From Podarcis erhardii (taxonomy: Eukaryota): a stretch of DNA of 64,000 nucleotides. The notes beneath the pieces were generated by a model, which had not been told where the DNA came from, did no database searches, and worked only from the letters and a program-made list of their open reading frames with translations. Shown here one piece after another: positions 1,381 through 34,200 of this stretch; within the stretch, counting starts at the first letter, position 1; the number at the start of each line of letters is the position of its first letter. The stretch is from NCBI GenBank assembly GCA_964252035.1, contig OZ176200.1, one strand, 5' to 3'. The position numbers and the translations under genes were made by a program.

Positions 1381-1485
1381 CTTACTCTGTAGTTTTTGCC
1401 CTCTTTTGGCCCTGTTGAAATCTGGTGTATCAAGGATAGATGTGTACTTGGTCTTTTGCTCCTTGCCTGCAGCTCTATACACAAG
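1381..1485 (-). CDS. NEB: NEB exon, 105 nt (last exon found in window)
   Basis: [35 protein letters not shown]; tag/gtaaga. Confidence 0.94.
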
Positions 1486-4230: not shown

Positions 4231-4290
<60 letters not shown>

Positions 4291-13200: not shown

Positions 13201-16200
13201 GGATCCAGCAAATCCTGGGCCAGTTCAGTACACTGAGACGGTATTTGCCCATAATGGTCACCTATCCCTCATCAAATTGTCCATTGGGCTGAGATAGGAG
13301 GAATGATTTGCCCAATGCCTTCCTATGACTTTATGGGTCCAGCAAGATTTGGGTTGGATGCTTCTTCTTCACGAACCACACTACCCCAATTTGTAAAGCA
13401 AAAGAGCAAGCTACTCACAACACCACCTTTTCCTGCTTCTCTATAGCAAATGAAATGGTTCTCAATTTGACCGGGTAAATACATACGTCGCTTAGAATTT
13501 CCTGGGCTCTTTTAGCCATAATAACATCGTGCTCCTCAGGTGAACAGTTCCACTGATGGAGGTAAGTTCGGTATTCAAGGTCACTAAGGATGTACTGGCA
13601 TTTCTTAGCCAACACGTGGTTTATCATGTCACTTGGGATATGAATGTGTGCCTTGGTGTCCTCATAATTCTTCCTGTAGGCCAGCTAGAAATCAGGAGAT
13701 TAAGATGGAAAATATATGTTTGTTTTTTCACATTATTCAGACTCAAGGAAGAGCCCCACCCAACAACAACAACAACAACAACACTACTACTACTTACCGC
13801 ACTCCTTATTTTTTGGAAAGCAAGAGAATGGACAACACTTGGGAAATCATTTATTTGTGTCCCAGCCAGATAATGGCCCTTCTGCTTCTCATACCCTTCT
13901 TTATATTTGAGCTGTGAAGTGCAAACATGGGACACGTTAGATAAGACACATAGCAGCCCCACAAGCAAACAGTGGCAAAGTAGTTAACGAGGGAAAGAAG
14001 GGTCACACTTACCTCGCTGTTAATGTAATCAGCATGTTTGGCACCCACAATAGGGATGTAGTCTGGAGGCAGAGTGTACCCAATGGCCTTGGTGGATTCC
14101 CATGAATCCTTGTACAGGTTCTAGACGGCAAAAGGTGCACATGGGATATAAATGAGCAGGATGTTTTCCAACAAATGTAATCATTGGCGAGCAAAAGCAA
14201 ATCAACTAAACCACTATGCATTCTCTACAGCACAATCTAGGACTCTTTCAATTTTTCCATAGCACAACACTATATAAATACTTCCTTGAATTAAATTTCA
14301 TTACCTTCACAGGGTTGTCTACTATATGTCTACTATATGTCTAACTATATATGGCAGCAGCCCTCAAGGGTCTCAATGAGATGTTCTTTCCAGCTATACC
14401 TGGAGCTCCCTGGAGCAGAACCAAAGATGTTCTGCACTATGTCCTAGTGCTGTACCACTAAGATATGGCACCTTCCCAATGGGTGAAGCTAGTAGATGGG
14501 GACTTGTCTAAGCTAGGGACCTAAAGTTCCCTACCTGTTAGCACCTATTTTTATACAATATCCTCAATGTGCTATTCACCCAGAAGCCTGAAACTTTATC
14601 ATCGAAAACAAACACTTCCTAATTTTGTGAAAACACTAAGCCAACTTTTGTACAGTAGGCTACATTCCAGTCGTGCAGAAGTCAGGACTTTCTACACATG
14701 CACAAGCAAGAGGATTGTTACAATGAAGCAATCAAGGAGAAGGTGGAGAAGGATCACAGGCCTGGAAGGGATCACGTGGCCTGAGGTTCCCTACCCCTGT
14801 AGTAACACATGGAGTTTTCATTATTAGATACACGAACAGCAAGAAACTTACATCACTGTACAGTTTAGCCATATCTCTAGAATGACTCAGGGCTGGAGTG
14901 TCATCAGAACCAATGTAGTGGCCTCTTTCAAGGTTAAAGGTTTCTTTGTATTTCAGCTAGAGAGAAAAATTAAATAGAGTGTTAACCCATCATTCCACGT
15001 GCTACCACACACACACCAGGATGACATATTCAGTATGCTGTGCTTCTTAAGGGATGAATGTCTTAATCAGCTTCTTGATGCATGAGGTGAACATACTAAA
15101 TGCTTCATGCTGGGGTGTTTTCTTTTATCCTTCAAATTCACTAAGTTATGAAGATCATTTTGAGCTCCTTTGAGGTGTCTCGTTGTTTACCTATGTTTGT
15201 TATTACTTCTGAATGATATAGCAAATTCAATGTCATACCATCATTTTGACAGAATTATTCTATTTATTTATTCTAATACCTTTCTCCCAAGACAGCACAC
15301 GTTAAAACAAATTATACAACACATATTCTGTTTAAACATTTCATTCTTCATGAATTGTGAGGCAACTCTTCCATACGCCATCTTAAGGGATATGCCACAA
15401 AGAATTATTTACACAAAAATACTGTCATTTCCCTTCGCAGGACTACTTTGGCATGTGGTCGTTTTTAAAATATTGTCGTATGTTCCTGAACATTTGAGTT
15501 ACACAATACCTTCTTAGTTCTAGCTGTGGTGATCAAGAGACATGACACTTTTATAATATATGAAAGTATGTATTTACTCAGAAATTCTGATTTAAAGGAT
15601 ACTTACATCACTCTGATTAATTGCGTTTGCCTTTGCCAGAACAATAGCTGGAGGGTCTTCCACAGGTGTGAAATTGGCAAAATTATCAATAGCCTCTTTT
15701 GTGTAGAGTCTCTGTAGGTAGACATGATTTGATTATCATAAATAACAGTTACAGGAAATGAATAGGATGCTGCCACAAATGTGTGAAAATTGCATCTTAC
15801 CTTATCAATCAAGTTCTGAGCGTTCTTCACTTTCCGATGCTCCACTGAATCTAAGGGAATCCAGCCACAGCCGCGGATCCATTCCAGATCAGATTTATAA
15901 ATATTCTGTACATATTTAAAAAGTTGAAGAATATTATTCACACCTATGCAGACAAAAGGACAAGCTGAGCCTTGATTTCCCTTCCCAGGCAATTGCTCTT
16001 GGGTATACCAATATCAAACTCTTAAACTGGTGCGATCTGATTGCAAAAATCACTTACATCGCTTTGAAGGTCATATGCTTTCTTTGCCTGGATGCAGTCA
16101 TTCTGATCAGGGTGGCAAGTCCATTCATGAAGGTAATGGCGATACGGAATTTCACTGACAACATGCTGGCAGTCTCTGGCTGCAATGACAGACAGTATAT

Positions 16201-19200
16201 CTGGAGGTATATGAATTTTGGACTTGGTTTTGTTATATGCCTGTTTATACAATCTGTCGTTCTGGATCTTGCCAGCATGTTCAAACCACACCAGTTTCGG
16301 GTCCTCTCTCATATTATTGACACCGACGTAGTGACCTCTTTGGTGGACATAGTCTGCCTTGTATTTCAGCTGAAATGGGAAAACACAGGTTCTTTAAATA
16401 TCTGCACTGGATCTTTCCTAATCCTAACTCTCTGGGTTATCCTTATGATTTCATGAAAGCATATCTGCTTTGTTTACTTGGTGGTCTTCCATCTCTGGGA
16501 ATAGCATGCAAGAGTTTTCTTTAAAAGAAGATGAACCACTGAAACAAAAGATATGAAGGATGGGCTCTTTGATAGCGACGGAAATCTGTGTGATTTTAAA
16601 GCTAAAGAGTGTTTACCTCGCTTTGGACATCACTTGAATGCTTGGCATGACGGATAGGCACACTGTCGTGAGGCAAAAGATAACCAGTAGCTTTCTCTCT
16701 TTCCCAATTCTCCTTGTACAGATGCTGTAAAACAGAGAATTAAAGGGTTACATAAGGACTGTCACTGATTCCATTAAAACAAAACAAAACAAGGAAAGTA
16801 CATACATGATTAAGAATCCTGGCTGCTTCTTTAGCTGCATCTAACTGTGGCGTGTCTGTCAGCGTATAGTTTGTCTTGATGTTATTCCATTCCTGGTGGT
16901 ACTTAATCTGAAAAAGTAAAATATACATAATAAAAGTCTTTTAGATTTACAAGTTATATATGTATAACTAGACTCACACAATAAAACTCAGTGAATTTTT
17001 AAGGCCCCAGTTTCCACAGATACATGGTTTAGTTTTTGTGGATGAAGAAAATCTGTCTGATGTGCGTACACTGAACTGAATCAAAATAAGAGGTAATACT
17101 TACATCACTTAGTATTTCCCCGCCTTGTTTGGCTGTGATATAATCAACCCTGTCAGCCACTGGTGTAAACGGTTGTTTGTCAACTTTTGTGCGATACAGT
17201 CTCTGCGCAGAAATAAAAGAAAAGCAATGAGGCCATACAATTGATTGCACCAGCAATAAGTGAAAAGAGAGAGAGTTGAGGGGAAAATATTCAAGGACAG
17301 GGACTGTCTCCTTTTTAATGTTTATCTTGCTTTCTGTCCTCTCCAGACCACATTCAGTAACAGAACCACCACTGTTGAGTTAGGATCTCTCATATGATAA
17401 TGAGGCACTAACTTTCCAAAAAGGTTTTGTCCCCCAAGTATAAAATACCCAGACCTTAATATCAAGGCTAGATATTGCCTATCCAAGCCCAAAGTGCTGG
17501 GTGAATGAGCCAAAACATAAGTGGGGAAACTTGACTTCCTGTTTCCCCCCCCCAAACAAAATTACTTTTGGAACCACAGTAATAAAATAATAATAAATAA
17601 TAACAAAATTTTATTTATATCCCGCCCTCCCCAGCCGAAGCTGGGCTCAGAGCGACTAACAACAGTAAAATGACGCAACATTCTAAAATCAGTTGGTTCC
17701 AAACTACAAGAAAAAAGATTCCACCTAAACATTAGGAAGAACTTCCTGACAGTAAGAGCTGTTCGACAGTGGAATTTGCTGCCAAGGAGTGTGGTGGAGT
17801 CTCCTTCTTTGGAGGTCTTTAAGCAGAGGCTTGACAACCATATGTCAGGAGTGCTCTGATGGTGTTTCCTGCTTGGCAGGGGGTTGGACTCGATGGCCCT
17901 TGTGGTCTCTTCCAACTCTATGATTCTATGGTAAAAGCAGTTCAAATCAGATTAATGGCAACCATTGGGCTCTGTGAGGATTGCCAAAGGAGGGGGTTAG
18001 GTTGTGCCCTGGCCAAAGGCCTGGTGGAACAGCTCTGTCTTGCAGGCCCTGCAGAAAGATGTCAAGTCCCGCAGGGCCCTAGTCTCTTGTGACAGAGCGT
18101 TCCACCAGATCGGAGCCACAGCTGAAAAAGCCCTGGCTCTGGTTGAGGCCAGCCTAACCTCTCTGTGGCCCGGGACCTCCAAGATGTTTTTGTGTGGGGA
18201 GGGAGGGGAAGATAATCCTGCCTCAGGAAATAGCTATGTGAAGGATAAGGTATAGTAACAAACAAGAAATGTCACTGGCAGGATTAGTTTTAATAAGCAT
18301 CATTCTTTCCCAAATATGGGGACGCAAGATGGGGACACTAATGCCAGAAAGTGGGGCCTCCTTATTGAAGAAATTATCTAGTCTGCAATCCTATGTACAT
18401 TTACCTGAGAGTAAGTTTTATTGATCTCAGTGGGAATTATTTCTGAATATACACTTATAAGATTGCGCAGATAACAGGTCTTTTGTATACTTGACAATAT
18501 TTTGACATGAATTTGCTTTGACTTGCTTTCTATTTTGCTAGATGCCATGTTTTGTTATACTGACATGCATTTTACTATTTTGTGCCAGTTGCGTTGCTTT
18601 CTGCTTTGCTTTTAGCCACTTTGGACTTCATTTGGGAACATAAAAAAATATAAACATAAATGAAATGCAAACAAAAGAAGGCCAATTTAAGAAGGTGGCG
18701 GACTCTCCTTCCTTGGAAGTTTTTAAGCAGAGGTTGGATGGCCATCTGTCATGGAAGCTCTAGCTGAGATTCCTGCATTGCAGGGGGTTGGAGTAGATGA
18801 CCCTTGAGTCCATTCCAACTCTAGGATTCTATGAAAATCTCTGCGAATGATATTTTTAACTAGTTGTTATTACCTCACTTAAAATGTCCTGAGCGTGTTT
18901 GACGTGATTGACAGAGACAGAGTCATTTGGCATCCAGCCAATTCCACGCAGCCATTCCAAGTCAGATTTATAAACAGCCTGCAGAGTCAGGGGAAAATAA
19001 GAACAGTTATTTGCAACACCTTTTCCCCTGCATGGAGTGTTTCATACCATACTTGATTGTTTTTAACTAAAAGGGAAAAGAGGGCTTGTTTTCCAAGAGC
19101 CTACAAAAAGAATGGGATAATAGAAAACTGAAAGGAGGAACTATTCAGGTACAGAATATGCCAGGAATAAATATTACACTCCCCACTTTGATTATGCTGT

Positions 19201-22200
19201 GTCTACCACCATCTTGCCTTCTGCAGAAGGCAAGATGGTGCTATATCCTATGTTTGCTCGACATATTCAAATCAGGTAATACAATCATGAAAAGAATGAG
19301 AGCTCAAATCTATACATAATGGAAAGCAATTAACTTTGTATGCATGGATGCATGTGCAGAAGTGAGGCCTCAATGTCCTTCTGTGTGCTTTCTTAAAGAC
19401 GTCTGGTGATTGTTCAAACAATACTGAATTTATATTTTAAAAAATCACATATAGTATGGATCTTACCTGTTCACACAAGTATTCTAAATATTTATTATTT
19501 TTTATGAAAAGGAATGTAATAATTGTGGAGACAAAATATCAAACACTTATCATTGTAGAGGAAAATGAGAGACAGAGAGTGATAGACAAGAAGCTATCAA
19601 GAAAGAGGAATTTCAACAAGAACCAAATCACTCACGTCACTCTGTAATTCATACGCTTTCCTGGCTTGGATGACATCATTCTGGTCAGGGAGACACGTCC
19701 ATTCATGCAGATAGCGGCGGTAATCAATGTCACTAACAAGCTTCTGACAGTTCTTGGCCAGCAAGACGGACAGCATGTCAACAGGGCTGTGGATCTTCGT
19801 CTTTAATTGATTATATACTTTCTTGTACTCCCGCTCACTTTGCATTTTAGCTACATGCATAGCCAATACCATCTTGGGATCATCGTTAATGTCTCGGCAT
19901 CCCACATGGTGTCCAAGTTGCTTACGGTAGCCTTCTTTGTATTTGTACTAATAGGATTTGAAAAAATACGTATACAATTAGAATCTTCATCTACGTTATC
20001 TCAGACTGTAGAAAGATTGATAAGATTGGCAAGAGTTTTCCATTTAACTCTGTTCCTAAGATGCTAAACAAAGGCTGCATTCATGCTCACATTTACTTGC
20101 AATCTATTGAGCAAATCACATATTTTTGAATTCTGTGCGTTACCTATCCTTTACCTGACCTTTTTTTTGACCAATGGCAGAGCATAATATTTCATCAGGA
20201 TAGTTGACAATTTATTTGGAGCACGTGCACAGCCTTCGCCAAGATGGCACCCTTCACATGTTTTGGACAACAACGTCCATCAGTCATGTTGGATGAGGCT
20301 GATGGATGTTTTAGTTCAAAACATCTGGAGGGCACTAGGTTAGTGAAAGCTGGCCCATAATGTCCTTATATCTTGCCTTGAACTGAGAGCTTTAATATAT
20401 TTTTTGTTTCCTGCATTTTAATTCCATTAGATACAAAAGTCCAGAGACAATGGATTACCAAACACTATCAAAATTCTATTTGCATACTTACATCACTGGC
20501 AATTTCTCTTGAGGCTTTGGCTGTTTTGATTGGGACTGCATCTGCTCTCAGGTCAATATATTTCTTCATGTCATCCCAAGATTCCCTATAAAGTTTCTAC
20601 AATAAAAAACCAAAAACATTATATTGTCATTATCCTCTTGCAGCACTGACATATACCATATTTTTCACCCTATAGGACGCACTGGCCCATAGGATGCACC
20701 TAGATTTGGGGGGGGGGCGAGTTTGCGGGGCTGGTGACGGGGAGGAGCAGGCTTCTCCCCCCTCCGCCAGCCTTCTAACCAAGTCGGGGGACAGCGGGAA
20801 AGGCGCGCTGCGCCTCCCGCTGTCCCCCGAGTTTGTGGGGCTGGCGGTGGGGCTCTCCTGAAGCCTGGAGAGCGATAGGGGTCGGTGCGCACCGACCCCT
20901 CTCACTCTCCAGGCTTCAGCAAAAGCCTGCATTCGCCCCATAGGACGCACACACATTTCCCCTTCATTTTTGGAGGGGAAAAAGTGCATCCTATAGGGTG
21001 AAAAATACAGTATATGAAAGCTCACTGTCAATCGGCTTTTACTTTTTCCTAATCACTCCTGTTTTTGCAGGTAAGAGTTACAGATTATCTCCATATAAAA
21101 CTATGTAAGGAAAAGTATTTAAACTGCATGTAAGTAACTGTGGATAACAAGTGCTAACATCTGTTTTGTGGCATCTCCACAAGCACAATAGATTGCTAGT
21201 TTGCACCTATGCAGGTGCAATAACCCACATAAAATTTACATGGGTGCTTGCTGCATAATGAACTTGTAACATCCAAAGCCCACCTCATCTGAGTAACTGA
21301 AGAAGGTTGTAGAGTTGTAACATAAGAAGAATGGTAGCAATTTACTTACATGGCTCACATTGATAGCATTAGCCCTGGACAGCACGATTTCTGGTGTGTC
21401 TGGCATCACATGGATCATAACTTTATCTTTATCCCAAGCTTCTCTGTATTTTGCCTGAAAAAAAAAACATCAAAATTATCTCGTAATTCCTTCTGCACCA
21501 GTGCTCACATTCCTACATAATTTCCCTTTAACTTTAGGAACATGAATAACTTTTCTATTAATACAAATAGATGCTTCATGTTACAAACTGATAGGGAGGT
21601 TTGCAGCATACTTAAAATAATGTCACATTACTCAAAGGAGTTACATACAAGACTCAGTTGCTCAGCGTTAGTTTTGGCAAGGACAACTTCAGGAGTGTCA
21701 ACGATGTTGGTAAATTTCAAACGATCCCGAGGAGTGCGATAAACGTTGTCACTCAGAATTTCCTGGGCAAATTTCACCCTCTTCACTATTGGAGACTCAT
21801 GCGGGATCCATCCAACCCCCCGGAGCCATTCCAGATCTGATTTATACACAGCCTATGAGAGAAAATTTCAGAGAGGGAGAGCAAGATATTTCAGTTCAAT
21901 TCAAAAGAAATACTTCATGTGGTAAATACTGTAGAATGAATGGAACTTCAGAAAGTTAGGATAAAGTTGTCTCAATTACATCATCAGGATCTAAGCAGTA
22001 CTATCTCTCTGGATTAGGCCAAAATGTTTCTTTGACCTCCACTTGTTTTTCACACCAGCATTTATAGCTTTGATCAGCACTATGCTGGCTGGGGAGTTGT
22101 GGACCAAAACATCTGGAGAGTTCCAGACTTGTGTAGATTGGGCTAGATAGAGTGGGCAGAAAGATAATCAAATCCATACATATGACAGCCCTCCAATCGG

Positions 22201-25200
22201 TTATGGATTCATTAGCTATTTTTAGATATGCCAAGTCTATCACATCACTCTTGTCTGTGTTGGATATTCTGAATTAACAACATTTCAGTTCTTCCTCCCA
22301 AGGTACTCATGATGAATTCGAGTGAAGATTAAATTACGTGAAAATGTGACAAGACAAGTTTTCATTAACACAACAAAATAAAAATTAAGAAAATGAAATC
22401 TTCCACAACTATCTATCATAATGTCTCTTTTGCTTTCTGTCCCAGCAGTAATGTGTGTTTGCAAAAGACAGATATACTTACATCACTTTGCAAAGGACAG
22501 ATATACTTACATCGCTCTGTAGTTCGTAGGCCTTCCTTGCCTGGATCACATCATTCTGGTCAGGCAGACAAGACCACTGGTGCAGATGTTGACGATAGTC
22601 CACCTCACTTACTAAAGACTGGCATAGCTTGGCTGCTTGGACAGACAGCATGTCCACCGGTATAGTAATATTGGCTTTGGATTTGTTGTAAGCTTGCTTA
22701 TACAACCGGTCATTCTGCATCTTCAATACTTTGGCAGCAAATGAAAGTTTAGGGTCCTCCTTCACTGAAGGGCATCCAATGTAGTGGCCTTTCTGTTTCT
22801 CATGAGCTTCTTTGTACTTGTACTGAGCAAGAAAGAGAATTGGAAGTCACAGTTATTTGATCAATTTCCAGGAGAAAAGTTAGAAGTTCTTGAGGCTTCA
22901 GTTTTTAAGGGATTTAGCTATGGAATAATGAGAGGGTAAATAAAACATAGTACGGCTCCCTTATTCTGTCTTTATGAAATATTTACCTGGATTTGTTATT
23001 AGGGATGAGAGAGAAATGTGGTTCATTTTACATTTAAAGTCACACTTCCATAATTCACACTTTATGAATACTGTATACAGAAGTGTATATGTATTAGGAA
23101 AAATTCACACAAAAATGCTAATGAATTTTTATTAGAACTAAAAAAAAACCCCAAAACAAGTCAATGTGGAAATGTGGAGAACTGACATTTTTGGCCACCC
23201 CTAATTGTATACATCCTGAGCCTAAGTAAAAAGATGTATTTTTTTCAAATAACCGGATATATATGTGGTTGCAAATTATACAAAGTCACAATGTCTTTTG
23301 AAAGGCGCAGACCACTTTGTTTAATAGTGAAATGCTACTGATGAAATTTGGCTATCCAAATAAATAGTTCAGAAATGGCAATCATATGCATTTTTACTTG
23401 GAACAAAGCCCAGTTGGGCATGGTGGAATTTACCTATCTGAGTAAAAATGCATAGGATGGTGTGCTCAGGGTGCTAAACTTGATTTGGAAACTATGCAAG
23501 ATTATTTTATTATTATTATTTAATTAATTAATTTATATACAACCTTATACACGGAGGTCTCTGACATTCCACAACTTAAGAGAAAACTTTAAACTGATTG
23601 TAAAGAAAGGGGAGGGGGGAACACTTGGGTGTTTTTAACAACAAGAAGCAACAGATTTAATTATTGCAAAGTCTTTACAGTGCCAAATATCTCCAAATTT
23701 ATCACAGTTAGCTCTTTGGCATTTAAAATAATGGACTATATTAAACTTTATGAATGTTTGAAAGAAGACACTTTCATAAATTGTAAAAGAATGGAAAGAA
23801 TGATGTCATAGACATGCAGTAGAGGATCTTGTATATGGGTGGATAAATACGGTTTTGAGACTGAATTATCAAATTGTTCATATACTTTGACATGTACACT
23901 CATCATATGAAAAGATATAGCCATTTGAGAAGTAAATGTCAAATAAAAGAGATTGTACCTCACTGGCAATTTCTCTGGAGGCTTTGGCATGCTTGACTGA
24001 AATAGCATCACCTCTTATGTCGTATCCTTTTGCTTTGGCCTCGTCCCAGGCTCCAGTGTAATGTTTCTGCAATCAGAATAAAATGCACAGTTTTCAATGT
24101 AATCATAAAATACATGATGAAAACCACTATAGACATTCCTCAATCAACACTGCGATCCAATGCAGGTTTACTTAGAAGTAAATCCAACTGTGCTCAATGG
24201 ACCTTACTCCGAAGTAAATATGGAATGCATAGGACTGCAGCCAAAAGAGTAAAAATGTGAATGCTGTGTAATATGACACATACAAACACTGCATAAATAT
24301 AGCTTATACAAATATATTTGTTTGCATGTATGCATACGTCTTATATAACTGACGCTGACAATTTATTTGGGGCCTAGATAAGAAACAGAATGATTGTGGG
24401 GAAGTACAATTTAGTAATAATAGAGCTTGACAGGCAGAAGATATTAAAGAAAGACTGACATTATCCAAATCACAAAATCATCAAAGCGTGTAACAATGAA
24501 ACACTCTGACAACGTTGGGATTTGGAACAAGTCAGTCTCTTTTTAATATCTTCTGTCCATGAAGTTCAGTTAATTCTCTTTATTACGTCTGAATAAAAAC
24601 TCACAAGTAAGACCCAAATGCCTTCTTGTTTTTAAGAACAGTTAATGGTGGGAAGTTGCATTTGACACAGTTGAACAGGTACAGATGCATCACTACACAC
24701 ATTCCACTCATGGGTATATAGTTAGTTAATTCTCTTACATTGCTGATATTCAGAGCATTAATCTTGGACTGCAGCATCCCAGGGGTGTCTGAAGGAAGAT
24801 GGAACTGAGTCTTCTCTTTATCCCAGGCTTCACGATACAGATTCTAAGAAGGAAGTGAAGGTATAAATGATTGCATTGCATTACAAAAACCTCTTATTTT
24901 TCAAAGGTATGCAACTTTAATTCACCCGTTCCCAATACCAATTTGTCATCATAACAAATACAGTAACTGGGTAATCCCCAAGCTTACCTCACTGACTTGT
25001 TGGGCATTGATCTTAGCCAGGACAATGGGTGGTGGGTCAGCAATACTTGTAAATTTCAGTGCATCTGGACGTTGCTTATACAATCTGTCATTCAGGATAT
25101 CTTGGGCGTGCTTCACTTTGAGCACTTCCACAGAGCCCTCTGGCATCCAGCCAATACCACGCAACCATTCTAGGTCTTGTTTGTAGGCGTTCTGCAAAGG

Positions 25201-28200
25201 AAACAATTATTAACAATATGGCTGAAAATGTTTCCTCCAATTTATTAAGAAGGCTGTTGCTGCCTCTCCGGCTCTACCCATCATAATACAGAACTTCCAT
25301 GGCTGGTCAATCACAAGAAGTACATACCACTAATGTGGGTATTAATAAACAGCCCTCTTTTTATCCCTTTTCAAGCTGCATATGGCAGAACAACAGTACT
25401 GGCCATGAGTAATACAGATTCTAGTAAATAACTCCAACTCAGGGCATGGGCTGCTTAATGCAGCTTAAATGAATTCTTTTCACACCTAAAATTCTCTGGA
25501 ATAGAAAGTAAAAGACCAATTGAAATGGACACCTCTAGAAGCATTTAGTTCTATGCAGGTGCCACAAATTCAGGTTTTGGTGCCTTACTTCTTCAGTTCA
25601 TGGTAGAGTCAATTAGCTTTGTATGCATGGATACATATGTTGAACTGAGTTCTCAATGTCCCCTTGTGTACTTTCTTAAAGAAGTATGATGATTGTCCAA
25701 ACAATACCAAATTTATATGTTAAAAAATTCACATGTACTATGGCTCTTAATATGTGTCACGTGTTCACAGAAGTAAAACGTTTATTACTTTTTAATGAAA
25801 AGATATATAAGAATTGTGGAGACAAAATATCATTGTAGAGCCAACAGTAATATTCCACCAAATGTCATGACAGAGGAAAGAGAGTGATAGACAAGAAGCC
25901 ATCATAAAAGAGATATTGCAACAATAACAAAATCACTCACATCGCTCTGTAATTCATACGCTTTCCTGGCTTGGATGACATCATTCTGGTCTGGCAGGCA
26001 GGTCCATTCATGCAAGTAGTGGCGGTAATCAATGTCACTAACAAGCTTCTGACAGTTCTTAGCCAGCAAGACGGACAGCATGTCAACAGGGCTGTGGATC
26101 TTCGTCTTCAATTGATTATATACTTTCTTGTACTCACGGTCACTCTGCATTTTAGCTACGTGCATAGCCAATACCATCTTGGGATCATCGTTAATGTCTC
26201 GGCATCCCACATGGTGTCCAAGTTGCTTACGGTACCCTTCCTTGTATTTGTACTAATGGGATTTGAAAAATTACGTATACAATTAGAATCTTCACCATAG
26301 CTATCTCAGACTCGGAGCTTTTTTTCAGCTGCAACTCACTTCTGGCACTTCTCATTTGGGTGCCATTTAATTGGTAATGTAAATATTCAGCACATGCATA
26401 GATCTTTGAATTTTACACATCCTTCATCTGACTTTTTTTGACCAACAAGATGAAAGCTTTGGTGCTAAGAGATTAATATTCTACTTCAGAAACCTTCATC
26501 AGGATACTGGACATTTTACTTGGAGCATATTTAAAGCAAACAGCAGCCTTCGCCAAGATGGCACCCTTCACATGTTTTGGACAACAATGTCCATCAGTCA
26601 TGCTGGATGAAGCTGATGGATATTTTAGTTCAAAACATCTGGAGGGCACTAGGTTAGTGAAAGCTGGCCCATAATGTCTTTATATCTTGCCTTGAACTGA
26701 GAACTTTAATATATTTTCTGTTTCCTGCATTTTAATTCCATTAGATGCAAAAGTCTAGATACAATGGATTACCAAACACTATCAAATTCTATTTGCATAC
26801 TTACATCACTGGCAATTTCTCTTGAGGCTCTGGCTGTTTTGATTGGGACTGCATCAGCTCTCAGGTCAATATTTTTCTTCATGTCATCCCATGATTCCCT
26901 ATAAAGTTTCTACAACAAAAAACCAACAACATTATATTGTCATCCCCTTTCAGCACTTACATATTTATGAAAGCTCACTGTCCATCAGCTTTTACTTTTT
27001 TCTAATCACTCCTGTTTTTTGCAGGTAAGAGATGCCTTAAACATTACAGGTTATCTCTATATAAAACTATGTAAGGAAAAGTATTTAAAGTGCATGTAAG
27101 TAACTGTGGATAACAAGTGCTAACACATCTGTTTTGTGGAATCTCCGCAAACACAATAGATTGCCAGTTTGCATACAAACAGCTAAATAAATTCCTTCCA
27201 GTAGCACCTTAGAGACCAACTAAGTTTGTCATTGGTATGAGATTTTTTGTGCATGCACACTTCCTCAGATACGGAGTGTGCATGCACACGAAAGCTCATA
27301 CCAATGACAAACTTAGTTGGTCTCTAAGGTGCTACTGGAAGGAATTTTTTAATCTTGTTTCGACTATGGCAGACCAACACAGCTACCTACCTGTAACTAG
27401 CTAAATAAATGCAGGTGCAATACCCCACCTAGAATTTACATGGGTGCTTGCTTCATCAAACTTATAACATCCAAAGCCCCCTTCATCTGAGTAACTGAAG
27501 TAGGTTGTAGAGTTGCATCGTAAGAAGAATGGTAGCGATTTACTTACATTGCTCACATTGATAGCATTAGCCCTGGACAGCATGATTTCTGGTGTGTCTG
27601 GCATCACATGGATCGTAGTTTTATCTTTATCCCACGCTTCTCTGTATTTAGCCTACAAAAATACAGAATTATCTGTTAATTCCTTTCCGCTGAATAATTA
27701 AAATAATGTCATGTTGCTGAAAGGTGTTACATACAAGACTCAGTTGCTCAGCGTTGGTTTTGGCAAGCACAACTTCAGGAGTGTCAACGATGTGGGTAAA
27801 TTTCAAACGATCCCGAGGAGTGCGATAAACGTTGTCACTCAGAATTTCCTGCGCATATTTCACCTTCTTCACTTCTGGAGATTCATTGGGGATCCATCCA
27901 ATCCCCCGGAGCCACTCCAGATCTGATTTATACACAGCCTGTGAGAGAAAATGTCAGAAAGGAAGGGCAAGATATTTCAGTTCAATTCAAAAGAAATACT
28001 TCATGTAGCAAACAGAATGAATGGAACTTCAGAAAGTCAGGACAAACTTGTCTCAATTACTTCATCAGGATCTAAGCAGTACTATCTCTCTGGACTAGAC
28101 CAAAATGTTTCTTTGACCTCCAGTTATATTTCACACCAGCATTTATAGCTTTGATCAGCACTATGCTGACTGGGGAGTTGTGGACCAAAACATCTGGAGA

Positions 28201-31200
28201 GTTCCAGACTTGTGTAGATTGGGCTAGATAGAGTGGGCAGAAAGATAATCAAATCCATGCATATGACAGCCCTCTAATTGGTTATGGATTCATTAGCTAT
28301 TTTTAGATATGCCAAGTCTATCATGTCATTCTTGTCTGTATGATGTGTTGGACATTCTGAACTAACAACATTTCAATTCTTCCAAGGTACTCATGATGAA
28401 ATCAAGTGAAGATTAAATTACGTGAAAATGTGACAAGGCCAGTTTTCATTAATAAAGCAACTACAGATGTTATCAGCGAAACAAAGTAAAAATTAAGAAA
28501 AGGAAATCTTCCACCACTATCTACCATGATGTCTCTTTTGCCTTCTGTCCCAGCAGTGTTGTGCTGTTTGTTTGGCTTTGCAGAGGACAGATATACTTAC
28601 ATCGCTCTGTAGTTCGTAGGCCTTCCTTGCCTGGATCACATCATTCTGGTCGGGCAGACATGACCACTGGTGCAGATGTTGCCGATAGTCCACCTCACTT
28701 ACTAAAGACTGGCATAGCTTGGCTGCTTGGACAGACAGCATGTCCACCGGTATAGTAATATTGGCTTTGGATTTGTTGTAAGCTTGCTTATACAACCGGT
28801 CATTCTGCATCTTCAATACTTTGGCAGCAAATGAAAGTTTAGGGTCCTCCTTCACTGAAGGGCATCCAATGTAGTGGCCTTTCTGTTTCTCATGAGCTTC
28901 TTTGTACTTGTACTGAGCAAGAAAGAGAATTGGAAGCTTAAGTAATCTGACCAATTCCAAGGAGAAATGTTAGTAGAAGTTCTTGGTATTTCAATTTTCA
29001 AGGGATTCGACTATGGAATATTCAGGGGGTAGATAAAGCATAGTACGGCTCCCTAATTCTGTCTTTATATTATAAAATATTTACCTGGACTTGCTATTAG
29101 GGATGAGAAGGAAATGCAGTCCAGTTTGCAGTTAAAGTCACACTTCCATAGTTCACACTTTTTGAAATGAGAACCAAAAGAAGCACAACTATGCTTTGAA
29201 ATTCACATTCTGCAAATTTTGTAATGCACATCTGTGGCCAAGTAGTGCATGCAGAAATGGATACTCTTGTGTAAAGTATGAATATGAAAACATGCATTAG
29301 TGAAAATCATACAAAATTTCATTAGGGAAAATGGTTTCGCAAAAATTAAGCAAAATTGCACACAAAAATTATATTAGGAGAATTTCTCGCTAAGATGATG
29401 AATTTTCATGAAAGCCTTTTTTAAAAAATACAAGCCAATGTGGAAATGTAATAATTTACTATAAATGGCTGTAAAATCAGATTTAATATGTCTGCTTGAA
29501 AATATGCCTGCCATTTTGGGACCAGTTAAACTAAGATTGTGAAAAATAGCTCATCTTGGCTTAACTGGCAATAGCCAATGCTGGAAGAAAAGATCTCTAC
29601 AGCTTGAGAACCAATGTAAGCAAATTTCAGGGTGTATCTGTGCCAACAGGCTAAAAACTGAAAATGCTAATCTAAAATCAGTTTCCTAATATTTACCAAA
29701 ATATTAGCCACCTGTTTAGCCTTGTAGGAAATAACATTACAGAAATAATATACAACAGTTGACAGTACCTCACTGGCAATGTTTCTCGAAGCCTTGGCAT
29801 GCTGAATTGCAATGGCATCCACTCTTAAGTCATAACCTTTTTTCTTGGCTTCTTCCCACCCTGCTTCATAATGTTTCTGTGAAGGAAATGAATAATGCAG
29901 CATTCATGTCAGTGTATTTCAATTTTTTTAGTAAGGGTCCTGAATATTAACTCATGTGTTTAAGATCTTCAGGTTGCAATTCTAAGTGCAAGTAATGGTA
30001 CATTTGATCAATCAATATGGAAAAAAAACAAAAAAAAATGTATTGACTTAATAATTTATGAAAACATTAATTGGCCTCATTATAAAATAGTAAGTCAGTG
30101 TGCCGAATAAAATCATCGCAGTAAAGCAATAACATGTTCCAAGTACAAATGCCACAACAGAGCCAGCACTAAAACATCATTGATTAGGAAGGCCTTTGTG
30201 AGTATGTGTGTTTAAACCAACCAGAGGAACATCATCACTGTAGATGCCCATTGTATCTCTAGGGGAAGGTCATTCCATGGCACGGGACGCATTAAATATT
30301 ACCATGTTGCCTTTTCTTCCATGTCAAGCTCCCACAATAGAATTTTATTGCTATGGTGTATACCGGTACATGTATTCAAACTTATAATGTAGTAAAGGTA
30401 AAGGGACCCCTGACCATTAGGTCCAGTCATGGCCGACTCTGGGATTGCGGCGCTCATCTCGCTCTATTGGCTGAGGGAGCCGGCGTACAGCTTCCGGGTC
30501 ATGTGACCAGCATGACTAAGCCGCTTCTGGCAAACCAGAGCAGCGAACGGAAACGCCGTTTACCTTCCCACCAGAGCGGTACCTATTTATCTACTTGCAC
30601 TTTGACGTGCTTTCAAACTGCTAGGTTGCCAGGAGCAGGGACCAAGCAACGGGAGCTCACCCTGTCACGGGGATTTGAACCACAAACCTTCTGATCGGCA
30701 AGTCCTAGGCTCTGTGGTTTAGACCACAGCGCCACCTGTGTCCCTAACATATAATGTATCTTACTCAAATAAATGCTGAAAAATGTATGTTTTTATACTG
30801 AGCCTAAAAGTAAATGAGTTAAAACTGAGGAACGAAGGGATGAAATAAAATATAAAATTAAACCCTCTTAGTTACTGCTATCTAACTTCACACTAAGAAA
30901 CACTGCAATGTTTTTTCTAATATTCAGTATTATGGGAAAGATCAAACATCATTCCAGTAGATGTGACAAAACTTCCTCTACTTTGCCCCACCCAATCTGC
31001 TCCAGAAAACCCCCTAGCTTGATATAAGCTATCAACAATATCATATTTTTCACATTAAAGACGTTCCTGCTTCCCACCTTCCATTTGTTTGCTCAAGTCT
31101 AGGGAATCATGAATTCAGTGAAAGGGCATTACTCATAGCTAATCAGAATTGGTTACTACATAGAGAACTGAATGGGCATTTCATCCTTTAGTATTCTCAA

Positions 31201-34200
31201 TTCCAATCATAAAACAATTTTAATTGATAGGCAATTGTCACCCAAACCCCTTATTTAAAGGTCAGAATTGCTTTACAGATGTATTCACATTTAATTCTTA
31301 CTTTGCTGACGTTCAGAGCATTCATTTTGGACAGAACCATCTCAGGAGTATCAGCTGGAAGAGTAAACTGTGTCTTTTCTTTATCCCAGAGTTCACGATA
31401 TAATGCCTAATGAGGGAAAAAATACAGTACTTCTTTCTGTTATAATATACAAAGTACATATTGAGATTATACATACAAAACCCTCCATACAAGCTACTTG
31501 TGTAAGCGGCCTAATCGTGTGTGCAGCATCACATAAGGCTTTTTAATTGGGGATTTATTAAAGAACAGCGGCTACTCCACTGTTAGAAAAATTGCAATGT
31601 TTGGCATTTCTAATCACAGAAGCAATCTTTTGCGAGACCTGCCTCTGCATCTATGTTCCTCAACAATCAGAGAAAGATACAGAAATATGTTCCAAATGCA
31701 GGGTTGCATCCAATAGTATCTTTGCAGTTGTAAGGAGGTACTTTAGTTTGATAAAGATGGGGCACACAATTTTCATATATGCCCACCTACCCACTGCTCC
31801 TAAGGCTTGGGGGGACCTTCTGGCATGGAAGGATTCGATAGGTAAGGGAGTATGGCAAAATGAGGTGGTATCACCTTATACGAATGGTATTACCTTTCAC
31901 TACTGGAAAGCTGCTACTGGATACAACCTATACCTTTGCATTGCATTTATTTGAATAAATAAAGGTGTTTACTATGATAGCAGGCAGAATGGGATGGTTT
32001 TCAAGCAGTAACTCAGTTTATAGGCTATCTAGCAAAGTGTACAGATCATGAAACAAACTGAAATCTCTGCACCCCAATTGCCCCAATGGAAAGTCTTCTT
32101 TGACTTCAGAGGGGTCTAAATGTGCTCTTAAATGAGAGCATAGGCAGCCTCAAGTGACTGTTGAAAATCAAAGCTGCATGGGTTTTGTGCTTATTATTTT
32201 CATATATCTCACTTGATTCCAGCATGCTGGAGTAAGCATCTAGAAGTACATTCTCCTCACATCCAAACAGCAGATACCCGAGGACCAAAAGGCAAATGCA
32301 AAGTTTCTTACATTGCTCTGAAGCAGAGCATTGGCCTTTGCCAAGACAATTTCTGGAGAATCAACAATAGCGGTGAATTTCACAGAGTCTGGTCGTTGAC
32401 GGTACAGTCTGTCATTCAGGATCTCCTGGGCCTTCTTCACTTTTAAGACTTCCAAAGAACCTTCTGGAATCCAACCAATACCACGTAGCCATTCTAGGTC
32501 TTGCTTGTAGACATTCTGCAAAGGAAACAATTGGGCTATTAACAATATGGTTGAAAATGTTTCCTCCAATTTAAGGTCTGCCAATTCGTACTATCATATG
32601 TTTGATCCATCCCATGCTAAATCTTGAAGACTAGGGGTGAAATTAATGGACTTAACCATGGTTATTAATTTCAGTGGGTCTACTTTGAGTAAAACTAAGG
32701 TGAATACTACACTTGCTCTAAACACAACCCTGGTACCAGGCCCAATAAGTCTTACACTGCAGTCCTTAGCATGGTTACATAAAAGTCCCTACTGAGCAAA
32801 GTGTGGCTTGTTCCCTAATTATTGTATTTAGGACTGCTAATCCAAATTATTTGTAGCAGCACCAGCACAAATAAGTTTAGGCACTTTTACTTACCATATA
32901 TTAGTTTACATTAGTTTTAGTTGTGTTGGGTTTTTTAAAAGTGTTTTAAATGCATTATAACATCGTGACTCCAGATGGCGCTGTAGAGTTTGGCCTTTCT
33001 GCAACGTGATTTCTCATTATGAGGTTTACAACGTGTTTTCCTGAAATGCTTTTATGATGTGTCTCAATCCAGCCCAGGGACATTGGAATTTTATCTTTAT
33101 TGATGCTCACTTTTTACAGCCTGCTTAACCAAGTAGAGTGTTTCTTTGCAGCCCTGCACAGTTTTGCATAAGAGAGCTCAGCTGGAGCTTCTGGACTGAA
33201 ACGCATCAGACTTTTATTTCTTTATGAATAGTCTAAACATATTTAATCCCATTCAGAAATTTATGGAAACAAAGGAAGCTGTCTTTATATCAGCTCAGAC
33301 TATTGGTCCATTTGGCCTAGACCTGCCTACTCTGATCAGAAGCTAGGGTCTCAGGCAACGAGAGAGATACCTGACCTTTTAAACTTGCTACTGATGTTCT
33401 AACTCTTTTCAACTCAATATGCCATAGACTGAAACTGAGAGACCTTCTGCTTGCAAAGTAGGTGTTTTGCCACTGAGCTGTGATCCCACCTCCATGTACC
33501 CAGGTGCTTTATGTTTGCTTTTACGTACATCACTCTGTATGTCATACACTTTCTTAGCCTGAATGACGTCATTCTGGTCAGGCAGGCAGGTCCATTCATG
33601 CAGGTAGTGGCGGTAATCAATGTCACTAACAAGCTTCTGACAATTCTTAGCCAACAGGACTGATAGCATGTCAACTGGACTATGGATCTTCGTCTTCAGT
33701 TGATTAAATACTTTCTTGTACTCCCGATCGCTCTGCATTTTAGCTACATGCATAGCCAACACCATCTTGGGATCATCTTGAAGGTTTCGGAACCCGATAT
33801 AGTGCCCTCTCTGCTTCTCATATGCTTCTTTGTATTTAAACTGCAAAAGAGAAAAGAAACACTTTTTAGAGCTATTATTACTATTATTATTTATTAATTA
33901 AAAGCATTGGGCATGCATGCTGAGACTAAGAAGAGTGGCAATCCAAAACGTTTGTAGGGCATCAAGCTGGGGAATATTACAAATGTTGAAGATATCAATA
34001 TAGGGTCAGTCGAAAGGACCTGCATCGCCACCCTAGAAGACCAAACACCTTTTCTTTGAATTAATTATTTCTATAATAGTCATTTTGAAAACCACAGGGT
34101 TGTTACTTGCATTTCTCTGCAGAAGTGTGTAATCAACACATCCACTTACATCACTAGCTATGTCCCTTGATGCCTTTGCAGATCTGATTGGAATTGCATC

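What the first reader, a model, noticed from the sequence alone, without database searches (positions are those of the whole stretch)
19325..33840. 8-exon (two super-repeat) tandem duplication of nebulin, apparently in a different register from the human triplicate region
Seen in the sequence: the exon series 32312, 31302, 29769, 28601, 27735, 27548, 26805, 25941 recurs as 24988, 24739, 23959, 22511, 21649, 21350, 20492, 19636. Sizes are the same (204/105/108/312/204/105/105/312) and peptides are paralogous, adding about 485 aa. Established: human NEB has a copy-number-variable 8-exon triplicate (exons 82-105), and nebulin size is linked to thin-filament length. Inference from my recollection of the human protein: the human unit is two PEGS-type super-repeats. 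The unit here is one PEGS-type repeat plus the repeat that follows the triplicate in human (the ...YRTP...DTPEVVLAK / 105-nt KLYRE...WDxMK exons). That would make this an independent duplication at the same hotspot, shifted by one super-repeat.
Basis: partly seen in the sequence, partly recalled or inferred. Interest (0 to 1): 0.75.

Follow-up and report, generated by a model that had tools for sequence, protein, structure and literature searches.

The report
One extra nebulin super-repeat, lizard lineage
This lizard's muscle-ruler gene nebulin has gained one extra 242-residue super-repeat by copying a four-exon block into a neighbouring intron, at the same expansion-prone spot where horses, cattle, snakes, skinks and (by numbering) humans have independently gained repeats; it is a further example of a known kind of event, not a clean two-repeat tandem duplication.

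Summary
All 16 exons lie at the stated coordinates on the minus strand. They have the stated sizes, AG/GT splice sites, open frames and Nebulin-repeat matches.

The series is not a uniform 8-exon tandem duplication. Only D'-A'-B'-C' (plus the X exon) is young: introns are 83-95% identical and dS is about 0.12. The first three exon pairs (32312/31302/29769 versus 24988/24739/23959) have dS of about 1.07 and unalignable introns. They are one-to-one orthologues of two consecutive ancient super-repeats, here called P2 and P1, in Pogona, Tiliqua, snakes, turtles and mammals. The AU test rejects them as a lizard clade (p = 0.006).

The canonical amniote order is Sx-P2-P1-Y-penultimate. This lizard has Sx-P2*-Y-P1-Y-penultimate. 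The net gain is therefore one super-repeat (242 aa), not about 485 aa.

Contigs from three related species bridge both junctions. A probable RNA run holds two variants of two duplicated exons.

Calibrating super-repeat numbers on published counts places the human triplicate on P2+P1, followed by Y. "Independent event at the same hotspot, different register" is therefore supported, but only indirectly. The scan's other notes on this window (s1-263247, s1-263216) concern the same DNA.

Verdict: new member of a known kind, modest interest.

The parts
33529..33840 (-). D exon of super-repeat i (Sx type). It is a mosaic: the 5' 78 nt are diverged and the rest resembles the X exons.
   Evidence: 84-85% nt identity to 25941-26252 and 19636-19947. 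Differences are concentrated in the first 78 nt. Groups with kD and mD at 98*.
29769..32515 (-). A2 (32312-32515), B2 (31302-31406) and C2 (29769-29876): the first three exons of the ancient PEGS-2 super-repeat (P2), here called j.
   Evidence: Splice sites and frames are intact. jA groups with the Pogona and Tiliqua P2 exons at 95/98*, with 88% identity to Pog3864. jC is 81% identical to Crotalus P2.
26405..29166 (-). Block I, the inserted copy. It holds D' (28601-28912), A' (27735-27938), B' (27548-27652) and C' (26805-26909) with their introns. The coding length is one super-repeat (726 nt).
   Evidence: Homologous to about 20140-23068 including introns. The edges are sharp. dS of A'B'C' is 0.12.
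25610..26312 (-). Block II, upstream copy: X exon kD (25941-26252) with about 60 nt of upstream and 330 nt of downstream intron. It is probably P2's own D exon.
   Evidence: 84.9% identical to 19327-20007. dS of the exon is 0.31, higher than in block I. A non-homologous patch separates it from block I.
23959..25191 (-). A1 (24988-25191), B1 (24739-24843) and C1 (23959-24066): the first three exons of the ancient PEGS-1 super-repeat (P1), here called l.
   Evidence: lA is sister to Pogona P1 at 96/82*, inside the squamate P1 clade at 100/86*. lC is 83% identical to snake P1. dS against j is 1.07.
20140..23068 (-). Block I, the source copy. It holds D' of P1 (22511-22822) and A' (21649-21852), B' (21350-21454) and C' (20492-20596) of the Y-type super-repeat m.
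   Evidence: jD and lD encode the same 104 residues, with 3 synonymous differences.
19327..20007 (-). Block II, downstream copy: X exon mD (19636-19947) with intron flanks. This is the D exon of the Y-type super-repeat.
   Evidence: It lies in the squamate X clade.
27174..27408 (.). Interspersed-repeat insertion present only in the upstream copy, so it arrived after the duplication.
   Evidence: There is no counterpart between 21205 and 21209. Word depth is 10^5 in three species' runs.
20655..21012 (.). G+C-rich insertion present only in the downstream copy.
   Evidence: There is no counterpart at 26964-26966. Similar peptides read on both strands in the ORF listing.

Best explanation
**What it is.** The region is the part of the nebulin gene (minus strand) just upstream of the last conventional four-exon super-repeat (SR). 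Each SR is four exons, A-B-C-D (204/105/108-or-105/312 nt).

In amniotes the canonical order here is Sx, P2, P1, Y, then the next SR with a split A exon.
- P2 is a PEGS-type SR whose D exon is of 'X' type.
- P1 is a PEGS-type SR whose D exon is D'.
- Y is the YRTP-type SR of 242 aa, with a 105-nt C exon.

**What happened.** In this lizard lineage, a block exactly one SR long was copied. The block is D' of P1 plus A', B' and C' of Y, about 2.9 kb of DNA. The copy now sits in the intron between P2's C exon and P2's own D exon.

The array therefore reads A2-B2-C2-[D'-A'-B'-C']-X | A1-B1-C1-D'-A'-B'-C'-X. This looks like an 8-exon unit repeated twice, but it adds only one SR (242 aa). The reading frame and the seven-module phase are preserved, because source start, source end and target are all C-to-D introns.

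**Shown here:** the exon map, the two ages of homology, the orthology of j to P2 and of l to P1, the sister relation of k and m, and the presence of both junctions in three related species.

**Inferred:**
- The route. Either one insertion by template switching, or two unequal crossovers: a +2 SR step between the near-identical X exons, followed by a -1 SR step.
- That kX is P2's original D exon.
- An age of tens of millions of years.
- About 38.5 nm of extra nebulin length per SR. That figure comes from Gohlke et al. (PMC7754682) as quoted in PMC7863720.
For: **Exons and family.** The exon map, splice sites and frames are.

**Two ages of homology.**
- Searches show the two classes of homology.
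- dS is 0.12 for k-m A'B'C', 0.31 for the X exon, 0.05 for D' and 1.07 for j-l ABC.
- Both block edges are sharp, and a non-homologous patch separates block I from block II.

**Canonical order.** Sx-P2-P1-Y is seen in the Pogona, rat, lynx, sheep, deer, orca, sperm-whale and pangolin predicted proteins.

**Trees.**
- jA groups with Pogona and Tiliqua P2 (95/98*).
- lA groups with Pogona P1 (96/82*).
- kA and mA are sister (95/86*).
- The AU test gives p = 0.0057 against jA+lA as one clade.
- In the D-exon tree, jD and lD fall in the P1-D' clade, and iD, kD and mD fall in the squamate X clade.

**Independent contigs.** Contigs from organisms A, B and F bridge 25610 and 29166.
- X1 records 1 and 8.
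- X13 records 9 and 15.
- X4 records 27 and 30.

**Probable RNA.** Contigs of run X15 lie on exons only. One joins kB to kA across the intron. kC and kD each occur in two variants, with difference counts that fit the k and m copies.
Against: - The comparison proteins are RefSeq/UniRef predictions. An isoform that skips exons, or a collapsed assembly, could hide a second Y in Pogona.
- No lacertid, teiid or other close outgroup protein was obtained. The age and spread of the event beyond the congeners in the read runs are therefore unknown.
- The higher dS of the X exon rests on 15 synonymous differences at 59 sites.
- The short non-homologous patch between blocks I and II could be a later replacement rather than a junction.
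- The sister relation of k and m could in principle be produced by gene conversion.
- X15 is only guessed to be RNA. No contig of it lay on A1, B1, C1 or C2.
Confidence: 0.8

Rival explanations
1. An old two-SR (8-exon) tandem duplication of [PEGS + Y], followed by gene conversion that homogenised a tract of about 3.7 kb (D' to X) between the two units.
For: - Exon sizes and order recur exactly.
- Identity is patchy, with one exon (D') at 99%.
- Conversion is clearly active in this gene: iD is a mosaic, and the squamate Y-D exon has been overwritten by the P2-D type.
Against: - The j and l A/B/C exons each have their own orthologue (P2 and P1) in Pogona, Tiliqua, snakes, turtles and mammals. 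In those species P2 and P1 are adjacent, with no Y between them.
- The old duplication would therefore have to predate amniotes, and the intervening Y would have to be lost in every other sampled lineage.
- The AU test rejects jA+lA as one clade (p = 0.0057).
Confidence: 0.1
2. A recent clean tandem duplication of the whole 6.2-kb unit. The three diverged exon pairs would then be fast-evolving or misaligned.
For: The start-to-start spacing of the homologous segments is a regular 5.95-6.31 kb.
Against: - dS is 1.07 for j-l ABC against 0.12 for k-m ABC.
- About 2.5 kb and 4.3 kb of introns do not align at all, while the neighbouring introns are 83-95% identical.
- jA and lA are closer to Pogona (88% and 90%) than to each other (74% nt identity; their peptides differ at about a quarter of positions, counted by eye).
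Confidence: 0.03
3. Assembly artefact: a falsely duplicated haplotype or a mis-join.
For: Repeat-rich giant genes are prone to assembly errors. Run X1 may come from the same sample as the assembly.
Against: - The copies differ by 5-17% and by copy-specific insertions. That is far more than haplotypes would differ.
- Contigs of two other species (X4 and X13) bridge both junctions.
- Summed word depth is about double over the shared block in X1. The tool warns this is no copy number, so it is only suggestive.
Confidence: 0.02

Closest known systems
Human NEB triplicate region (TRI, exons 82-105; 8-exon, 10-kb block x3, 99% identical, copy-number variable)
   Same: - An intragenic gain of whole super-repeats, in frame.
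- It lies in the same neighbourhood of the SR array. By calibrated numbering, TRI = S16-S21 falls on P2+P1, followed by Y.
   Different: - The human blocks are head-to-tail, uniform over exons and introns, and young. Each adds 486 aa, which is two SRs (PMC12402328).
- Here a one-SR block (242 aa) is copied non-adjacently. It is 5-17% diverged from its source.
- It spans the P1/Y boundary rather than covering P2+P1.
- The human exon register was not tested directly.
Lineage-specific nebulin SR duplications described by Bjorklund et al. 2010 and Gohlke et al. 2020 (PMC7754682)
   Same: - Multiples of seven modules are gained.
- The events are independent in different lineages.
- The duplicated unit differs between species.
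- Most gains fall at human SR 17-21.
   Different: - No lizard was in the 53 species of Gohlke et al. Their reptiles were alligator, turtle and viper.
- The non-tandem placement of the copy and the squamate-wide overwriting of Y's D exon are not mentioned in the text I could read.
Arrays seen here in predicted proteins of other amniotes
   Same: The same P2-P1-Y neighbourhood is expanded in each:
- horse: P2,P1,Y,P1,Y
- cattle: P2,P1,(A'B'C2D2 hybrid),P1,Y
- water buffalo: Sx,P2,Sx,P2
- snakes: P1 x4
- Tiliqua: Y x4, i.e. the same D'-A'-B'-C' block in tandem
- turtles: P1,P2,P1
- Buteo: P1 x3
   Different: All of those are tandem. This lizard alone has the extra Y placed between P2 and P1, with P2's C exon now followed by a D' exon.

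Membership tests
Nebulin super-repeat exons | Nebulin repeat (Pfam PF00880) in the exon translations | tested here: met
   Seven of the eight exons of the upstream unit (32312-25941), scanned singly, reach the gathering score. The 108-nt C2 exon alone gave no match.
Nebulin super-repeat exons | A seven-module super-repeat of 242-244 aa, with one WLKGIGW-type motif and a four-exon structure of 204/105/108(105)/312 | tested here: met
   The A exons carry WLRGIGW. The predicted proteins of all 17 species typed show the same 242-244 aa period.
Tandem segmental duplication of an 8-exon (two-SR) unit, TRI-like | Head-to-tail copies that are homologous over the whole unit, introns included, at one level of divergence | tested here: not met
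   Only 19327-23068 and 25610-29166 are homologous through introns. The rest of each unit is not. dS is 0.12 in one part and 1.07 in the other.
Tandem segmental duplication of an 8-exon (two-SR) unit, TRI-like | Both units descend from one ancestral unit within the lineage | tested here: not met
   jA groups with P2 of other squamates and lA with P1. The AU test gives p = 0.0057.
Lineage-specific nebulin SR gain (Bjorklund/Gohlke kind) | An extra whole super-repeat relative to relatives, in frame, with the paralogues sister to each other | tested here: met
   There are four SRs between Sx and the split-A SR, against three in Pogona and the canonical mammals. kA and mA are sister at 95/86*. All frames are open.
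Same hotspot as the human TRI | Positional homology of the duplicated SRs with human exons 82-105 | tested here: inconclusive
   - The numbering calibration and exon counting both place TRI on P2+P1, next to Y.
- No human or primate sequence was retrieved in three word searches.
Expressed, functional exons | Both copies are transcribed and spliced into nebulin mRNA | tested here: inconclusive
   - X15 contigs lie on exons only. There is one kB-kA splice join, and kC and kD each occur in two variants.
- The run is only guessed to be RNA, is small, comes from a related species, and is stored as contigs.

The most novel reading that the evidence does not exclude
The P2-P1-Y neighbourhood of nebulin may be a pan-amniote hotspot at which at least eight lineages gained super-repeats in different exon registers.

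In squamates specifically, Y's D exon was overwritten by P2's D exon. That created near-identical direct repeats two super-repeats apart, which now seed rearrangements.

This lizard's copy would then have arrived by a non-tandem insertion that preserves the register (template switching, or a +2/-1 pair of crossovers). The result is a hybrid P2/P1 super-repeat and a second Y, both retained under purifying selection for tens of millions of years.
Probability: 0.35. Interest if true: 0.45.

Novelty: new member of a known kind. Interest (0 to 1): 0.33.

Why it matters
Nebulin length is thought to help set thin-filament length, and each super-repeat adds about 38.5 nm (Gohlke et al. 2020; Kiss et al. 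2020, as cited there).

This locus adds a lizard lineage to the list of independent gains. It also shows that a series which looks like an 8-exon duplication can be a mosaic of ancient paralogues and one young block. That matters for counting super-repeats and for dating such events.

The survey made here suggests that the stretch corresponding to the human disease-relevant triplicate expands in many amniotes, in different registers. The survey rests on predicted proteins only.

None of this changes the understanding of how nebulin works.

Tried and rejected
**Searches that did not give what was needed**
- Three word searches were run to obtain lacertid and primate nebulins. The lists were swamped by isoform rows from birds of prey, horses and ruminants. 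They yielded Crotalus, Ahaetulla, Tiliqua, Pogona, two turtles and many mammals, but no lacertid and no primate. The absence of apes says nothing, because only 515 candidates were scored.
- Gohlke's Table S2 (super-repeat sequences) is not held. PMC4929883 and PMC4295925 are not held either.

**Methods abandoned or too weak on their own**
- Anchoring SRs by BLAST hits of D exons was too noisy, giving off-register hits. A motif anchor replaced it.
- With five outgroup species only, the AU tests for j+l were weak: p = 0.087, 0.094 and 0.31 for A, B and C. Adding three squamates made the A-exon test decisive.
- The global MAFFT alignment mis-handles the two copy-specific insertions, so its figure of 55% for the B'-C' intron is an artefact. 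BLAST gives 88% on the alignable parts.

**Readings I dropped**
- I first read the locus as lying at the C-terminal end of the SR region, against Gohlke's statement that no expansion occurs there. I rejected this after calibration: six more 245-aa units follow, and Gohlke counts them as super-repeats.
- I looked in the window for the equivalents of human exons 143/144, the mutually exclusive pair. None was found at 10.3-12.8 kb. By the numbering they lie beyond the window.

**Other**
- Rfam gave no hits in 19-34 kb.
Exons were searched and treed one by one, by reference.
Full report
**1. Observation**

The window has no N runs. The minus strand carries nebulin exons.

I curated thirteen four-exon super-repeats (SRs), labelled a to m. 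Each consists of exon A (204/207 nt), B (105), C (108 or 105) and D (312). All have AG acceptors, GT donors and open frames.

- j = 32312/31302/29769/28601
- k = 27735/27548/26805/25941
- l = 24988/24739/23959/22511
- m = 21649/21350/20492/19636

Scanned one by one, seven of the eight exons of j and k reach Pfam's Nebulin gathering score. The exon at 33529-33840, the upper end of the finding, is the D exon of the preceding SR, i.

Exons were handled singly, by reference, throughout.

**2. The recurrence has two ages**

Self-comparison finds homology that runs through introns only between 19327-23068 and 25610-29166. This covers the exon pairs lD/jD, mA/kA, mB/kB, mC/kC and mD/kD.
- There the exons are 93-99% identical.
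- Alignable intron is 83-95% identical.
- Each copy has its own insertion: 20655-21012 in one and 27174-27408 in the other.

For the other three pairs (jA/lA, jB/lB, jC/lC):
- Only the exons align. Local BLAST segments are 77-80% identical, and whole exons are 74-75% identical.
- The 2.5 kb and 4.3 kb of introns around them do not align.

Synonymous divergence says the same:

| Comparison | dS |
|---|---|
| k-m A'B'C' | 0.12 |
| j-l D' | 0.05 |
| k-m X exon | 0.31 |
| j-l ABC | 1.07 |

The young homology itself falls into two blocks, with a patch of about 100-130 nt between them that does not align.
- Block I is about 20140-23068 versus about 26405-29166. It holds D'-A'-B'-C', which is 726 coding nt, exactly one SR.
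- Block II is 19327-20007 versus 25610-26312. It holds the X exon with its flanks, and it is older by dS and by flank identity.

**3. What the exons are orthologous to**

One exon (28601-28912) was searched against the representative library. Long hits from that search then served as queries for the word search. These returned named predicted nebulins of Crotalus, Ahaetulla, Tiliqua, Pogona, Gopherus, Pelodiscus, Buteo, horse, cattle, buffalo, deer, rat, lynx, whales and others.

I cut these proteins at the KGxGW motif into 242-244 aa units and typed each exon-equivalent. A canonical order appears in Pogona, rat, lynx, sheep, deer, orca, sperm whale and pangolin:
- Sx
- P2: PEGS-type, with an X-like D
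- P1: PEGS-type, with D = D'
- Y: YRTP-type, 242 aa
- then an SR with a split A exon.

In the window:
- i is Sx.
- j has P2's A, B and C but a D' exon.
- k is Y.
- l is P1.
- m is Y.
- n (18874..16058) is the split-A SR.

Trees of single exon types support this.
- jA groups with Pogona and Tiliqua P2 (95/98*; 88% identity to Pogona).
- lA is sister to Pogona P1 (96/82*; 90% identity).
- kA and mA are sister (95/86*) inside the squamate Y clade (98/95*).
- Forcing jA and lA together costs 35 log-likelihood units (AU p = 0.0057).
- With fewer taxa the separate A, B and C tests pointed the same way but were weak.
- In the D-exon tree, jD and lD (identical proteins) sit in the squamate P1-D' clade. 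iD, kD and mD form a clade (98*) within a squamate 'X' clade.
- In that clade, P2's D and Y's D pair up within each species. Turtles, birds and mammals keep a distinct Y-type D.

**4. Reading**

Relative to the canonical array, the lizard has one additional SR, not two. What was copied is the one-SR block D'-A'-B'-C'. Its copy lies between P2's C exon and an X exon.

That X exon (kD) is probably P2's own D exon, for two reasons:
- It is older than block I by dS.
- A non-homologous patch separates it from block I.

The phase is kept because the source ends and the target are all C-to-D introns.

Two routes fit the data:
- a single insertion by template switching;
- an unequal crossover between the near-identical X exons (giving P2,P1,Y,P1,Y, as in the horse), followed by a one-SR deletion between P2 and the first P1.

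The data do not decide between them.

Both copies look functional. dN/dS is 0.37 for A'B'C' and 0.03 for X. At dS of about 0.12 the event is probably tens of millions of years old. That age is an inference, because no calibrated rate was used.

**5. Independent support**

Twenty public runs from 9 studies, labelled with nine coded organisms, hold part of 23900-29880. Contigs from three organisms bridge both junctions at 25610 and 29166:
- X1: 23900-25974 and 28907-29880
- X13: 24458-25989 and 28895-29346
- X4: 25150-25974 and 28944-29346

The arrangement is therefore not an assembly artefact, and it predates the split of these close relatives, which share about half or more of the sampled 31-mers.

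A small run guessed to be RNA (X15, organism B) has contigs on exons only.
- One joins kB to kA across the intron.
- kC occurs in two variants (0 and 4 differences) and kD in two variants (2 and 8 differences).
- These counts match the k-m difference for kC (4 of 105 nt) and the number expected from 94.6% identity over 160 nt for kD.

This suggests that both copies are transcribed. It is not firm: the run type is a guess, and no contig lay on A1, B1, C1 or C2.

**6. Comparison with the human triplicate**

The literature says:
- TRI is exons 82-105, a 10-kb eight-exon block x3 at 99% identity. Each block adds 486 aa (PMC12402328).
- Human nebulin has 29 SRs. S12 (exons 63-66) and S16-S21 are the alternatively spliced ones. 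WLKGIGW lies in the third module, and eight simple repeats precede S1 (PMC7754682).
- The 22-SR isoform lacks S11b and six TRI SRs. Exons 143/144 lie in the penultimate SR (PMC7109182).

I calibrated unit counts on Gohlke's table:

| Published count | Units counted here |
|---|---|
| mouse 25 | rat 24 + 1 |
| horse 27 | 26 + 1 |
| cow 27 | 26 + 1 |
| turtle 26 | Pelodiscus 24 + 2 |
| golden eagle 25 | Buteo 23 + 2 |

This calibration fixes S1 at the first anchor (about residue 451) and the last SR six units beyond Y. In 25-SR mammals it gives S15 = Sx, S16 = P2, S17 = P1 and S18 = Y.

Two further checks agree:
- The 22 = 11 + 3 + 8 bookkeeping.
- An exon count from this window (5, 6, 6 and 7 exons in the four units after Y).

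This is indirect. I had no human or primate sequence, and the exon at which the human block starts is not settled.

My first impression was that the lizard event lay at the C-terminal end, against Gohlke's statement. That was wrong, because they count the following 245-aa units as SRs.

**7. The hotspot**

In the predicted proteins, the same neighbourhood is expanded in different registers:
- horse: P2,P1,Y,P1,Y
- cattle: an in-frame A'B'/C2D2 hybrid
- buffalo: Sx,P2 twice
- snakes: P1 x4
- Tiliqua: the D'-A'-B'-C' block x4 in tandem
- turtles and a hawk also show expansions.

This fits the known statements that SR gains are independent, come in multiples of seven modules, and vary in unit between species. 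Bjorklund et al. 2010 is known to me only through the citation in PMC7754682 and from my own memory of its abstract. Gohlke et al. 2020 I could read.

**8. Verdict**

This is a real, lineage-specific nebulin expansion of a known kind, at a known hotspot, in a group not sampled before.

The '8-exon, two-super-repeat, +485 aa' reading is not. 'Independent, same hotspot, other register' is right in substance.

Interest is modest.

Noticed in passing
window 41296-44023 and 44487-46721: A second, single-super-repeat tandem duplication (SRs g and f). Identity is 79-87% including introns, and the A and B exons encode identical peptides. This is the same DNA as the scan's note s1-263216. I did not test that note's claim of a chimeric 312-nt exon.
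   Followed up: partly
window 36243-36769 and 39982-40510: The D exons of SRs h and g, plus about 200 nt of flanking intron, are 93% identical at a spacing of 3739 nt. The rest of these two SRs is much less alike. This looks like a short conversion tract.
   Followed up: no
window 33529-33840: The D exon of SR i is a mosaic. Its first 78 nt differ from kD and mD at 22-23 positions, and the remaining 234 nt differ at only 26-30 positions. Its N-terminal peptide resembles the Sx-type D of turtles and mammals. This suggests partial overwriting by the X type.
   Followed up: partly
predicted proteins P0348 (Pogona), P0272 (Tiliqua), P0264 and P0283 (snakes), and window exons 25941-26252 and 19636-19947: In every squamate sampled, the D exon of the Y-type SR groups with the D exon of P2 of the same species. 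It does not group with the Y-type D of turtles, birds and mammals. This points to squamate-wide replacement, or continuing concerted evolution, between exons two SRs apart.
   Followed up: partly
predicted proteins P0235 (horse), P0290 (cattle), P0310 (water buffalo), P0272 (Tiliqua), P0264 (Crotalus), P0160 (Buteo): These show independent expansions of the same Sx-P2-P1-Y neighbourhood in different exon registers. They include an in-frame hybrid SR (A'B' of Y joined to C and D of P2) in cattle, and a four-fold tandem D'-A'-B'-C' block in the skink. They are seen in predicted models only.
   Followed up: partly
window 27174-27408: An interspersed repeat inserted in one copy only. Word depth is 10^5 in the runs of three species, and many contig ends and joints pile up there. 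Moderately repeated stretches also occur at 26500-26699 and 28100-28299.
   Followed up: no
window 20655-21012: A G+C-rich insertion of about 360 nt in the other copy only. Similar peptides read on both strands, suggesting an internal inverted repeat. It was not identified, and Rfam gave nothing.
   Followed up: no
window 1381-18978: Downstream of the finding, the gene continues with units of 242-248 aa that keep a degenerate WLKGIGW/GIGC motif but are split into 5-7 single-module exons:
- 18874..16058
- 15801..13487
- 12669..8928
- 8231..4349
- 3971..

The published SR counts appear to include these units.
   Followed up: partly
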